31,585 bases of DNA, taken from Utricularia gibba. Its lineage: Eukaryota; Plantae; Magnoliophyta. Positions 17,511-28,269 of the stretch are shown here, in pieces (the first letter of the stretch is position 1; every line of letters starts with the position of its first letter). The notes beneath the pieces were generated by a model, which saw only the letters and a program-made list of their open reading frames with translations, did not search any database and was not told the origin of the DNA. The stretch lies in NCBI GenBank assembly GCA_002189035.1, contig NEEC01000157.1, forward strand, positions 1 through 31,585, in the 5' to 3' direction. The position numbers were made by a program, and so were the translations under genes.

Positions 17511-20500
17511 ATGTGGAGACTCAGAGTTGCTCAGGGAGACAATAATCCTTACCTCTACACAACTAACAACTTTGTGGGAAGACAGACGTGGACCTTCGAT
17601 GAGGACTACGGCACACCGGAGCTCCGGGAAGCAGTGGAGAAGGCCCGAAGTGACTTTTGGGAGAATCGCCACACTGTGAAGGCAAACGGTGATCTCCTAT
17701 GGCGGACGCAGGTATTTGCGTTGGAAAATGCATGCTGATCAAGATGCCAACTTATATACCATGCTGAACTGTGCAGTATTTGCACGAGAGTAACTTTCGG
17801 CAAAGGATACAGCAAGTGAGGGTGGGCGACGATGAAGATGTGAGTCATGAGAAAGCCACCGCCGCTCTACGACGTGGGGTTCATTATTTCGCGGCGTTGC
17901 AAGCCAGCGACGGCCACTGGCCCGCAGAAAACGCCGGCCCGCTGTACTTTCTACCGCCACTGGTAAAGCATTCGCCTTTGCCTGTTTAAGAAATAAAGCG
18001 TTCCAATTTTTTCAACCTTGCCACTTAAGCCATGCAGGTGATGGCCTTGTACATGATGGGATGCCTCAACACAGTTTTCTCACCCCAACACTGCAGAGAG
18101 ATTCTTCGTTATCTGTACTGCCACCAGGTAAACTAAGTAATATTTTGGGCAACAACTAAAATGAGATGAGAATTGGAGCAAACGCGAAAAAAAAGTAAAA
18201 ACATACTTGAGAATTGATGACAGAATGAAGATGGAGGATGGGGGTTCCATGTAGCAGGTCACAGCATGATGTTCTGCACTGCACTAAGTTACCTTTGCAT
18301 GAGGATTCTGGGCGTAGACAGCAACAATACCTCCTGCATCAAAGCTAGGAAGTGGATCATGGACCACGGAACGGTTAAGGCCATCCCTTCGTGGGGCAAG
18401 ACTTATCTATCTGTCTGTACTCTCTCTCAACTCTAAACTTTCAGAGATTGAGACTGGTTAAACATATACATGATTGTTCCTATTTTCAGATAATCGGGTT
18501 GTATGATTGGTCCGGTACTAACCCGATGCCACCTGAATTCTGGTTGTTCCCTACATATCTCCCAATACATCCAGGTCCTCTTCTGTCTGTTTTCCTTTTT
18601 CATGATGCAGGTTGACATCATAGATCTTATTTCAAATGACAGCCAAAATGATGCCTTATTGTCGTATGGTGTACATGCCGATGTCCTACTTGTATGGCAA
18701 GAGATTTGTAGCTCCAATCACTCCTCTGATCTTAGAACTCAGACAAGAGTTATATGATGAGCCTTACGAGAAGATTGATTGGAGAAGCCTGCGAAAAGTA
18801 TGCGCAAAGGTTAGTCATTGATAATGAATTACACTTAATGAAGAGGAAGGAGCAAGATCTGAAAACCTGTATTCTCTGGCAGGAGGATTTGTATTATGCA
18901 CATGGATTTGTACAGGACTTCATTTGGGATGCTTGCTATTTAATTGCTGAGCCTCTACTGTCTCGCTGGCCTTTCATTAAGCTACGGGACAAAGCTCTGC
19001 AAGTTACCATGAAACACGTTCATTATGAAGATGAAAACAGTAGATACATTACCATAGGCTGCATAGAGAAGGCACTTTGCTTGATGGCTTGTTGGGTTGA
19101 GGATCCTCAGGGGGAGTACGTCAAGAAACACCTCGCCCGCATCCCCGATTACATGTGGGTAGCGGAGGATGGCATGAAGATGCAGGTAATGTACCAGTGC
19201 GATGATTTATTCAGTTATTATAAACAAAAATGCTCACAATCCATGATCTAGAACTGAGATAACTGATCTTGTGTTCATAAACAGACTTTTGGCAGTCAAC
19301 TGTGGGATGCATCTTTTGCCATACAAGCATTATTGGAATGTGATCTCACTGGTGAGATAGGAGAGACCTTAAAGAGGGGTCATGAGTTCATAAAGAACTC
19401 TCAGGTTGCTACTTCATTACAAATGTTCTAGCCACGCTGCAAATCAATAGATATATCAATAGCTACTCATATGCAGGTGAAGGATAATCCTTCAGGTGAT
19501 TTCCGGAGTATGTACCGGCATATTTCTAGAGGATCATGGACATTTTCTGATCAAGATCATGGATGGCCAGTCTCCGATTGCACCGCAGAGGGTTTGAAGG
19601 TACACTTGCAATCCATTGGTATTTTGATTCTTGATGGAAAAGACATCCCTTTGAGTTTCTATTTCTCAGTGTTGCCTTCTCTTCTCCATGATGTCACCGG
19701 AAATCGTTGGAGACAAGATGGAAGACGTGAAACTCCACGATGCTGTCAATATAATCATGTATCTGCAAGTGAGACTTTTTAACAGACACGCTTTGGGCAT
19801 AATCCATGCAATTTGTCCATCTCACGGTTTACAACTGCAGAGCAAAAATGGTGGCTTTCCAGCTTGGGAACCAGCAGGGGCATCCAAGTGGCTTGAGGTA
19901 GGTTCCCACATCCACATTCCAAACCGATTGAACTTAATCCGAAAAAAAAACACATTTTGCAGTTGCTGAATCCTTCGGAGTTTTTCGAAGATAACGTTGT
20001 GGAACACGAGTACGTGGAATGCACCGCTGCATCAATCCAGGCCCTAGTTCTGTTCAAGAAACTGCATCCCCAACACCTTAATAAAGAAATCGAGATCGCC
20101 ATCAAGAAAGCTGATGAATATATCAAGAGTATTCAAAGACCGATGGCTCATGGTAAAAGAACTTCAACACTTACGATTCCAATCACCATCATCGATAGCA
20201 TATTGTTTTGCAAGGTACGGGAGTTGGGGAGTTTGCTTCACCTACGGCACATGGTTCGCACTCTCCGGACTATCGCCGCCGGCAATACATACCAGAATTG
20301 CTCCGCCATCCGTCGAGGAGTTAATTTTCTCTTAAGCACCCAGAGGGACGACGGCGGCTGGGGAGAATCCTACCTTTCTTGCCCAAAGAAGGTAAGTTCT
20401 GGAAAATAAATAAATAAATAATATATTCAAACGATTAATGAATTAAAATTATTAAATAACAGGAGTACGTGGCACTGGAAGGAAATCGCTCAAACTTGGT

Positions 20501-20882
20501 CCAAACATCATGGGCCATGTTGGGCCTCATGCATTCGGGCCAGGTCAATCATCAGCCCAACCCAACAGTCCATTTGTTGTTATATTAAATTAAAAAAAGT
20601 ATTATTTATTCCAGGCACAGAGAGACATCACCCCACTCAACCGTGCAGCAAGGCTTCTGATCAACGCCCAGTTGGAGGATGGAGATTTCCCCCAGCAGGT
20701 AACTCAATCAACGTTACTGCACTCTTGAGAATGGAATTTTCAGGAACTTACTGAGTCATTGAGAATGGAATTTTCAGGAACTTACTGGAGCCTTCATGAG
20801 AAACTGCATTGCCCACTACCCACTCTATCGGAATGTATTCCCGATCTGGGCTCTTGCCGTGTACCGTAAATGTATTGGCTGA
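17511..20882 (+). CDS. OSC: Oxidosqualene cyclase (triterpene synthase, beta-amyrin/lupeol-synthase-like clade), copy A, 16 exons; two apparent -1 frameshifts plus two splice-site lesions
   Basis: Exons 17511-17711, 17777-17962, 18038-18127, 18224-18412, 18490-18574, 18643-18809, 18883-19185, 19285-19404, 19477-19599, 19670-19768, 19841-19897, 19963-20152, 20215-20391, 20463-20543, 20615-20698, 20778-20882. Motifs MWRL...[51 protein letters not shown]. Missing bases at ~20140 and ~20274 relative to copy B. Confidence 0.95.
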
Positions 20883-27900: not shown

Positions 27901-28269
27901 AACTTGGTCCAAACATCATGGGCCATGTTGGGCCTCATGCATTCGGGCCAGGTCAATCATCAGCCCAACCCAACAGTCCATTTGTTGTTATATTAAATTA
28001 AAAAAAGTATTATTTATTCCAGGCACAGAGAGACATCACCCCACTCAACCGTGCAGCAAGGCTTCTGATCAACGCCCAGTTGGAGGATGGAGATTTCCCC
28101 CAGCAGGTAACTAAATCAACGTTTACTGCACTCTTGATCCAGTAACTGAGAATGGAAGTTTCAGGAACTTTCTGGAGCCTTCATGAGAAACTGCATTCTG
28201 CACTACCCACTCTATCGGAATGTGTTCCCTATCTGGGCTCTTGCCATGTACCGTAAATGTATTGGCTGA
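24914..28269 (+). CDS. OSC: Oxidosqualene cyclase (triterpene synthase), copy B, 16 exons, 752 aa after correction; two apparent -1 frameshifts in exon 4
   Basis: Exons 24914-25114, 25184-25369, 25445-25534, 25631-25817, 25891-25975, 26044-26210, 26284-26586, 26686-26805, 26878-27000, 27071-27169, 27243-27299, 27369-27559, 27622-27799, 27871-27951, 28023-28106, 28165-28269. All GT-AG; SDCTAE and QW motifs intact. G runs at ~25648 and ~25800 are each one base shorter than in copy A. Confidence 0.95.

What the first reader, a model, noticed from the sequence alone, without database searches (positions are those of the whole stretch)
17511..28269. Two recent tandem OSCs with non-canonical, mutually different active-site motifs: candidates for new triterpene skeletons
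Seen (A vs B): MMPYCRM vs MMCYCRT (18648/26049), [12 protein letters not shown] vs [17 protein letters not shown] vs LNMMG, NGGFPAW vs [23 protein letters not shown] vs [26 protein letters not shown] vs [16 protein letters not shown] vs NCILHY. Both have TFGSQLWD and EDLYYAHG. Several differences are 2-3-nt codon swaps (CCT/TGT, CCA/GGA, GCC/CTG) although much of the gene is near-identical. Established: MWCYCR marks beta-amyrin synthases and MLCYCR lupeol synthases, and this position plus residues around DCTAE and the C-terminal MLHY steer product outcome. Inference: neither copy is a standard beta-amyrin or lupeol synthase, and they may make different or mixed products; A may instead be decaying.
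Basis: partly seen in the sequence, partly recalled or inferred. Interest (0 to 1): 0.75.

Follow-up and report, generated by a model that had tools for sequence, protein, structure and literature searches.

The report
Tandem divergent triterpene cyclase gene pair
Two neighbouring copies of a plant triterpene cyclase gene carry unusual active-site residues. Each copy also looks broken by two missing bases, but those breaks are most likely assembly errors, so this is probably an ordinary pair of working, fast-evolving enzymes whose product is unknown.

Summary
Every motif sits at the stated coordinates. The two genes (A 17511-20882, B 24914-28269, + strand, 16 exons each) are 94% identical tandem oxidosqualene cyclases.

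I read these breaks as assembly errors, not decay, for these reasons:
- All eight exon breaks found in four genes of the window are 1-base deletions, and six sit in short single-base runs.
- All splice sites are intact and there are no stop codons.
- Exon lengths equal those of the Genlisea aurea orthologue once the four bases are counted.
- Both copies reject neutral evolution.

In the tree the pair is sister to the Genlisea beta-amyrin synthase, inside the Lamiales beta-amyrin synthase clade, on a long stem. Twelve residues that are near-invariant in that clade are replaced in both copies. MMCYCR is not unique: Sesamum and Capsicum homologues have it. "Not a textbook beta-amyrin or lupeol synthase" is therefore fair; "new skeletons" is speculation. 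Copy A is not decaying faster than B. This is a new member of a known kind, of modest interest.

The parts
17511..20882 (+). OSC copy A: 16 exons (17511-17711, 17777-17962, 18038-18127, 18224-18412, 18490-18574, 18643-18809, 18883-19185, 19285-19404, 19477-19599, 19670-19768, 19841-19897, 19963-20152, 20215-20391, 20463-20543, 20615-20698, 20778-20882)
   Evidence: Exon model with GT-AG at all 15 introns. It is 73% identical over its full length to the Genlisea, Perilla and Sesamum beta-amyrin-synthase-like proteins. Exon lengths match the Genlisea orthologue.
24914..28269 (+). OSC copy B: 16 exons (24914-25114, 25184-25369, 25445-25534, 25631-25817, 25891-25975, 26044-26210, 26284-26586, 26686-26805, 26878-27000, 27071-27169, 27243-27299, 27369-27559, 27622-27799, 27871-27951, 28023-28106, 28165-28269)
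   Evidence: An exon 13 piece hits Pfam SQHop_cyclase_C at E 2e-12. Exon 7 hits the plant OSC structure 8j5z at E 3e-53.
25647..25650 (+). Break B1: a run of 4 G where copy A has 5 (codon 165). As assembled, B reads NEDGGWGSM then a stop.
   Evidence: A/B alignment. Genlisea exon 4 is 189 nt, as in A, against 187 nt in B.
25796..25801 (+). Break B2: one base missing in or beside a G run (IPSWGK region, codons 215-217).
20139..20141 (+). Break A1: CC where B has CCC (codon 600, IQRPDGSW), 13 nt before the exon 12 donor site.
   Evidence: Genlisea exon 12 is 191 nt, as in B, against 190 nt in A.
20273..20276 (+). Break A2: one T missing (codon 624, [10 protein letters not shown]). This break is not in a single-base run.
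   Evidence: Genlisea exon 13 is 178 nt, as in B, against 177 nt in A.
18648..18668 (+). A: MMPYCRM. Met replaces the Trp of MWCYCR, and Pro replaces the following Cys.
   Evidence: At these two columns 129 clade proteins show W 118 / L 4 / M 3 / F 2 and C 113 / I 14 / V 1, with no Pro.
26049..26069 (+). B: MMCYCRT.
   Evidence: The same MMCYCR occurs in Sesamum P0156 and Capsicum P0281.
19555..19590 (+). A: [12 protein letters not shown]. The catalytic Asp is kept. Gln478 is replaced by Pro.
   Evidence: Q in 126 of 129.
26956..26991 (+). B: [12 protein letters not shown]. His475 is replaced by Gln and Gln478 by Gly.
   Evidence: 12 of 129 have Q at 475; 1 of 129 has G at 478.
20802..20819 (+). 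A: NCIAHY. The clade has NCMLHY. Leu730 to Ala needs three base changes.
   Evidence: L in 127 of 129.
28189..28206 (+). B: NCILHY. The Met729-to-Ile change is shared with A.
20727..20787 (+). A only: two 27-nt copies (starting at 20727 and 20761) duplicate the acceptor site of the last intron. The upstream acceptor would leave a 45-nt intron and shift the frame. The model uses the downstream one, with the exon starting at 20778.
20293..20704 (+). Tract almost identical to B 27701-28112, with one mismatch (at 20454) in about 410 bp that span exons 13-15 and their introns. The flanks differ by 5-7%. This is likely gene conversion between the copies.

Best explanation
A and B are two tandem paralogues of a fast-evolving oxidosqualene cyclase. 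The gene descends from the canonical asterid/Lamiales beta-amyrin synthase and is orthologous to the Genlisea aurea beta-amyrin synthase gene, so the host is probably in Lentibulariaceae. That host assignment is an inference; the organism name was coded.

The four single-base gaps that break the frames are most likely consensus errors of the assembly. In the plant, both genes would then be intact 752-residue enzymes.

The machinery for the reaction is kept:
- Asp481 of DCTAE to protonate the epoxide.
- Cys in VECT.
- Tyr of the xYCR motif, which goes with pentacyclic products.
- Phe724.

The inferred mechanism is the usual one. 2,3-oxidosqualene folds chair-chair-chair and cyclises to the dammarenyl cation. 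The rings then expand towards the lupanyl and oleanyl cations.

Both copies have Met in place of the Trp that stabilises the oleanyl cation. They also share 12 replacements at residues that are near-invariant in the clade. The product spectrum is therefore probably shifted or mixed (lupeol/amyrin-type) and not pure beta-amyrin. Private changes in each copy may make the two profiles differ: A has C255P, Q478P, I551N and L730A; B has Y134N, H475Q, Q478G, Y557C and G609A.

Shown here: gene structure, breaks, phylogenetic placement, selection and residue statistics. Inferred: that the breaks are artefacts, that the enzymes are active, and what they make.
For: Evidence that the breaks are artefacts:
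- All 8 exon breaks seen in 4 genes of this window are 1-base deletions, and six sit in runs of 2-5 identical bases. They are OSC-A x2 and OSC-B x2, the AAA ATPase x3 (the complete Pfam AAA domain 1-131 appears only from the frame starting at 2928) and the DUF212 gene x1.
- Intron indels between A and B have sizes 6, 2, 1, 3, 1, 2, 4, 1 and 22, unlike the exon breaks.
- There is no stop codon besides the frame shifts, and all 30 introns are GT-AG.
- Genlisea exon lengths equal ours once the four bases are added back.

Selection:
- A versus B gives dN 0.028, dS 0.096 and omega 0.29.
- Polarised on Genlisea, A has 16 nonsynonymous and 12 synonymous changes (p 0.008 against neutrality). B has 17 and 22 (p 1.5e-6).

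Placement and residues:
- A+B are sister to Genlisea beta-amyrin synthase with support 100*, inside the Lamiales clade, on a stem of 0.24.
- 12 shared and 2-3 private changes fall on columns at least 97% conserved, against a median of 1 in 98 clade members.

Literature: W259L turns Panax beta-amyrin synthase into a mainly lupeol-producing enzyme (PMC9634032).
Against: No read or cDNA evidence could be obtained. No near-identical protein from this organism turned up in the protein collection.

Break A2 is not in a single-base run.

Eight breaks in about 10 kb of coding sequence would mean a poor consensus.

A lineage that sheds genes could hold many young pseudogenes.

Omega of 0.2-0.36 is above the long-term value of about 0.1, which also fits relaxed constraint.

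Several replaced residues are reported or inferred to matter for structure (Leu734-equivalent to Ala in A; W220Y in both copies). Loss of activity is therefore possible even with intact frames.

Expression is untested.
Confidence: 0.55

Rival explanations
1. Both genes are intact, as in the best explanation, but they are still ordinary beta-amyrin synthases. The motif changes would then be tolerated drift in a lineage with fast sequence evolution.
For: The pair sits inside the beta-amyrin synthase clade. A Sesamum protein 86% identical to the characterised Aralia beta-amyrin synthase also has MMCYCR. [quoted passage not shown] A-versus-B differences hit conserved columns within the range of other close pairs.
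Against: Replacing this Trp by Leu in Panax beta-amyrin synthase gives mainly lupeol (PMC9634032). Each copy has 15-16 changes at near-invariant columns, against a median of 1 and a maximum of 10 elsewhere, and only 1 in Genlisea. The Sesamum MMCYCR enzyme is itself uncharacterised.
Confidence: 0.25
2. One or both copies are real, recently inactivated pseudogenes. The single-base deletions would then be true mutations, and the odd active-site residues would reflect relaxed constraint before death.
For: As assembled, neither copy has an open frame. Omega is raised relative to the long-term value. Strictly conserved residues are replaced in both copies. A has a duplicated acceptor site that could cause mis-splicing. 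No matching protein or transcript-derived protein was found.
Against: The same 1-base deletions break two unrelated and otherwise well-conserved neighbouring genes. None of the 8 exon breaks is longer than one base or an insertion. There are no stop codons and no lost splice sites. Both branches reject neutrality. B is broken at codon 165, yet its remaining 587 codons stay open.
Confidence: 0.15

Closest known systems
Genlisea aurea beta-amyrin synthase (partial record, 754 aa; protein P0252, contig KE530844.1, locus L001)
   Same: It is the sister in the tree (support 100*). It has the same 16-exon structure with equal exon lengths except exon 8, which is 123 nt against 120. DCTAE, VECT and the QW-type repeats are shared.
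   Different: It is only 73% identical. It keeps MWCYCR, DHGWQV, WGKTW and NCMLHY, and has just 1 change at near-invariant columns against 15-16 in A and B. On the contig in hand it is a single gene.
Sesamum indicum beta-amyrin synthase-like protein (P0156) and a Capsicum annuum partial homologue (P0281)
   Same: Both carry the MMCYCR motif of copy B. The Sesamum protein is in the same Lamiales clade.
   Different: The Sesamum protein is otherwise canonical: 86% identical to Aralia beta-amyrin synthase and 1 change at near-invariant columns. Neither protein has a tested product as far as the names show.
Panax ginseng beta-amyrin synthase PNY mutant W259L and Olea lupeol synthase OEW mutant L256W (Kushiro et al. 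2000, as summarised in PMC9634032)
   Same: The position is the same as Met254 here. These mutants show that losing the Trp shifts the product from beta-amyrin towards lupeol.
   Different: These are engineered single mutants with Leu, not natural enzymes with Met plus many further changes.
Tripterygium wilfordii friedelin synthase, solved structure 8J5Z
   Same: It is the closest solved plant OSC. Exon 7 matches it at E 3e-53. Its identity comes from PMC13737970.
   Different: It lies on a different product branch (friedelin). I made no structural mapping, because the joined protein could not be handed to the fold tools.

Membership tests
Plant oxidosqualene cyclase (terpene cyclase/mutase family) | Full-length homology to OSCs, including the squalene-hopene-cyclase-type domains | tested here: met
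   The joined model aligns over residues 1-751 with 70-73% identity to many OSCs. An exon 13 piece hits PF13243 at E 2e-12. Exon 7 hits the OSC structure 8j5z at E 3e-53 and human lanosterol synthase at 2.5e-10.
Plant oxidosqualene cyclase (terpene cyclase/mutase family) | Catalytic Asp in DCTAE, with the partner Cys in VECT | tested here: met
   DCTAE at residue 481 and VECT at residue 558 in both copies.
Plant oxidosqualene cyclase (terpene cyclase/mutase family) | Uninterrupted reading frame | tested here: inconclusive
   Each copy has two 1-base gaps as assembled. The pattern across the window points to assembly error. I obtained no reads.
Beta-amyrin synthase clade (by descent) | Branches within the clade of named or characterised beta-amyrin synthases | tested here: met
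   FastTree of 103 proteins: sister to Genlisea beta-amyrin synthase (100*), within a starred 7-row Lamiales group, among the asterid beta-amyrin synthases from Panax, Aralia and Kalopanax. This is one quick tree with no AU test.
Beta-amyrin synthase (by function) | MWCYCR motif with Trp | tested here: not met
   MMPYCR in A and MMCYCR in B. The clade has W in 118 of 129. The motif is not strict: 66 of 85 beta-amyrin synthases have it (PMC13657253).
Beta-amyrin synthase (by function) | VFM triad before NCMLHY | tested here: not met
   AFM in both copies. VFM is found in 67 of 85 beta-amyrin synthases.
Beta-amyrin synthase (by function) | Beta-amyrin as the main product | not testable with these tools
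   This needs heterologous expression and GC-MS.
Lupeol synthase | MLCYCR motif, or branching with lupeol synthases | tested here: not met
   The motif has Met, not Leu. The nearest relatives are all beta-amyrin-synthase-like. No characterised lupeol synthase was in the tree, so the branching half was tested only indirectly.
Pseudogene | Frame breaks together with other decay: stop codons, lost splice sites, neutral substitution pattern | tested here: not met
   Frame breaks are present, but there are 0 stop codons, all 30 introns are GT-AG and omega is 0.29. Both branches reject neutrality at p 0.008 and 1.5e-6.

The most novel reading that the evidence does not exclude
Both genes are intact and expressed. 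Through the shared W254M and W220Y changes and the private changes at residues 255, 475, 478, 557, 609 and 730, they make two different triterpene profiles. At least one profile would be dominated by a scaffold not known from the beta-amyrin synthase clade. That would be a very young case of product divergence between tandem copies in a minimal plant genome.
Probability: 0.1. Interest if true: 0.6.

Novelty: new member of a known kind. Interest (0 to 1): 0.3.

Why it matters
If the frames are intact, this is a natural pair of 94% identical cyclases that differ at about ten conserved, cavity-related residues. Such a pair is a compact system for mapping which residues steer triterpene product choice, and for testing what Met in place of the MWCYCR Trp does.

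The more immediate lesson is practical. This assembly seems to drop single bases in short runs. Genome-mining pipelines that discard any OSC needing a frameshift would therefore lose these genes; the 599-genome survey did this (PMC12858397). Any 'pseudogene' call on this genome needs read support.

Tried and rejected
- Reads: the look-up of sequencing runs listed 14 holders from 6 studies. Four small runs were guessed to be RNA and held 28-37% of the sampled words. I therefore have no read evidence on the breaks or on expression. One local script compared the window with itself inside the sandbox and read that stretch as part of the file.
- Exact look-up of ten window ORFs in the protein collection found none.
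- The representative search with exon 7 and three word searches found no protein more than 80% identical to A or B (local check). The word searches used exon-by-exon alignments A2 and A3, then Sesamum P0156. Only the best 120 hits are listed, so short fragments could be hidden.
- Two scans of metagenome contigs with patterns allowing either run length gave 0 hits.
- Alignment A1 (all exons against one full-length protein) misplaced the N-terminal exons and was dropped.
- MMCYCR occurs in no paper of the library.
- I looked for a third OSC copy. Only flank similarity exists (29052-29671 to 15171-15888), with no OSC exons.
- The top hit (Hibiscus P0150) is a doubled gene model, not a relative.
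- Joined step left out: the spliced proteins, with X at the four breaks, were built only inside scripts for local BLAST, alignment, tree and dN/dS. They were never sent to a search or fold tool. There is therefore no structure model of A or B, and residues were not mapped onto 8J5Z.
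Full report
**What is there**

The window is compact plant DNA. A self-comparison shows a 3.5-kb direct repeat at 94.3% identity, 17465-20944 against 24867-28330.

I built gene models from the A/B alignment. Each copy has 16 exons with GT-AG at every intron. The start codons are at 17511 and 24914, and the stop codons end at 20882 and 28269.

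Pieces of the genes hit known cyclases:
- Pfam SQHop_cyclase_C.
- The solved plant oxidosqualene cyclase 8j5z, at E 3e-53 for exon 7. PMC13737970 identifies 8j5z as Tripterygium wilfordii friedelin synthase.

**The frame breaks**

Each coding sequence is 2257 nt, two short of a multiple of three.

| Break | Place | What is missing |
|---|---|---|
| B1 | exon 4, 25647-25650 | one G; four G against five in A |
| B2 | exon 4, about 25796-25801 | one base in or beside a G run |
| A1 | exon 12, 20139/20140 | one C; CC against CCC in B |
| A2 | exon 13, 20274/20275 | one T, not in a run |

Once these four columns are allowed for, both copies translate to 752 residues with no stop codon. The Genlisea aurea orthologue (locus L001) has 16 exons of 201, 186, 90, 189, 85, 167, 303, 123, 123, 99, 57, 191, 178, 81, 84 and 105 nt. 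Exons 4, 12 and 13 have exactly the lengths of the unbroken copy in each case.

**Are the breaks real?**

I could not lay reads.

Evidence from inside the window points to assembly error:
- The BCS1-like AAA ATPase at 2259-3620 changes frame three times within 160 bp, at about 2771, 2834 and 2926. Each change is a missing base in a short run. The sequence on either side stays well conserved, and the complete Pfam AAA domain, Walker A included, appears only in the frame that starts at 2928.
- The DUF212 gene on the minus strand has the same lesion at 14576-14594, with three T where four are needed.
- So all eight exon breaks in four genes are single-base deletions, six of them in runs. The indels in the OSC introns have sizes 6, 2, 1, 3, 1, 2, 4, 1 and 22.
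- First-stage notes on three other pieces of this genome describe the same pattern. These are leads that agree, not independent proof.

Substitutions argue the same way:
- A versus B gives dN 0.028, dS 0.096 and omega 0.29.
- Polarised with the Genlisea coding sequence, A has 16 nonsynonymous and 12 synonymous changes. B has 17 and 22. Both depart from the neutral expectation, at p 0.008 and 1.5e-6.

I put about 80-85% on the breaks being artefacts.

**Relatives**

No protein from the same organism was found. The closest full-length relatives are about 73% identical:
- Genlisea aurea beta-amyrin synthase (partial record).
- A Perilla cyclase.
- A Sesamum beta-amyrin-synthase-like protein.

In a tree of 103 proteins, A and B are sister to the Genlisea protein (support 100*). 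They sit inside a Lamiales group, within the asterid beta-amyrin synthases, on a long stem of 0.24. The host is therefore probably a relative of Genlisea. The run pattern and the tight gene spacing suggest Utricularia, but that is my guess and is unverified.

**How unusual are the residues?**

I compared A and B with 98 to 129 clade members.
- Each copy has 15-16 changes at columns that are at least 97% conserved. Other members have a median of 1 and a maximum of 10; Genlisea has 1.
- Twelve of these changes are shared by A and B, so they predate the duplication: I135M, T136M, W220Y, H302K, I352V, V367I, M373L, L374M, K465R, R579L, H699N and M729I.
- The Trp of MWCYCR is Met in both copies. 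Met also occurs in Sesamum P0156 and Capsicum P0281, 3 of 129 in all.
- Private to A: A196S, C255P (no other Pro), Q478P, I551N and L730A.
- Private to B: Y134N, H475Q (12 of 129 have Q), Q478G, Y557C and G609A.
- Derived changes are symmetric, 13 in each copy.
- The share of A/B differences on conserved columns is 26% at the 0.9 level or above. Other 91-97% identical pairs have a median of 17.5% and a maximum of 46%.

The striking part is thus the shared stem divergence, not the difference between the copies.

**Function**

The catalytic Asp of DCTAE, the Cys of VECT, the Tyr of xYCR and Phe724 are all kept.

The literature gives this context:
- Replacing the motif Trp by Leu makes Panax beta-amyrin synthase produce mainly lupeol, and the reverse change turns a lupeol synthase into a beta-amyrin synthase (PMC9634032).
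- A recent review finds MWCYCR in 66 of 85 beta-amyrin synthases, VFM in 67 of 85, and warns that such motifs are loose (PMC13657253). Both copies here have AFM.
- The Leu replaced by Ala in A corresponds, by my own numbering, to Leu734 of the Euphorbia enzyme. A paper title cited links that residue to local protein architecture.

I infer working pentacyclic triterpene synthases with a shifted or mixed product, but the sequence cannot tell which.

**Limits and rules followed**

- The spliced proteins were joined only inside scripts, with X at the breaks. All database searches used exons by reference or proteins returned by the tools.
- No structure of A or B was predicted.

Noticed in passing
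window 2259-3620 (+): A BCS1-like AAA ATPase gene (AAA_assoc, AAA and lid domains) is broken by three 1-base deletions at about 2771, 2834 and 2926. All three sit in short runs, and the sequence is otherwise well conserved. The net frame returns after the third break, but there are stop codons in between.
   Followed up: yes
window 14296-14993 (-), break at 14576-14594: A DUF212 (divergent PAP2) gene has one missing T in a T run. It splits ...VANPT / FVSGLCAWAIAQ... into two frames.
   Followed up: yes
window 9567-11088 and 20976-22440: The stretch just downstream of OSC-A is a 90-94% copy of the upstream region and 5' part of the first of two tandem bHLH genes (10759-12020 and 12290-13374; HLH plus ACT-like domains). 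A bHLH promoter fragment therefore lies between the two OSC copies.
   Followed up: partly
window 20946-20975: Telomere-like repeats (TTTAGGG / TTAGGG / TTTAG) sit exactly at the junction between the end of the A/B repeat and the bHLH-derived copy.
   Followed up: no
window 29052-29671 vs 15171-15888: The flank 2.3 kb upstream of OSC-A recurs at 74-77% identity 0.8 kb downstream of OSC-B. A short 49-bp piece also lies at 22439-22487. The duplicated unit is larger than the genes. No third OSC copy appears before the window ends.
   Followed up: partly
window 20293-20704 vs 27701-28112: About 410 bp, introns included, have a single mismatch, although the flanks differ by 5-7%. This suggests gene conversion between the copies, or consensus mixing during assembly.
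   Followed up: partly
window 16001-17000: This stretch upstream of OSC-A is extremely AT-rich (GC 14%).
   Followed up: no
protein P0150 (Hibiscus sabdariffa) and P0386-P0388: Several database 'proteins' are fused or doubled OSC gene models from tandem arrays. They top score-ranked hit lists without being close relatives.
   Followed up: partly
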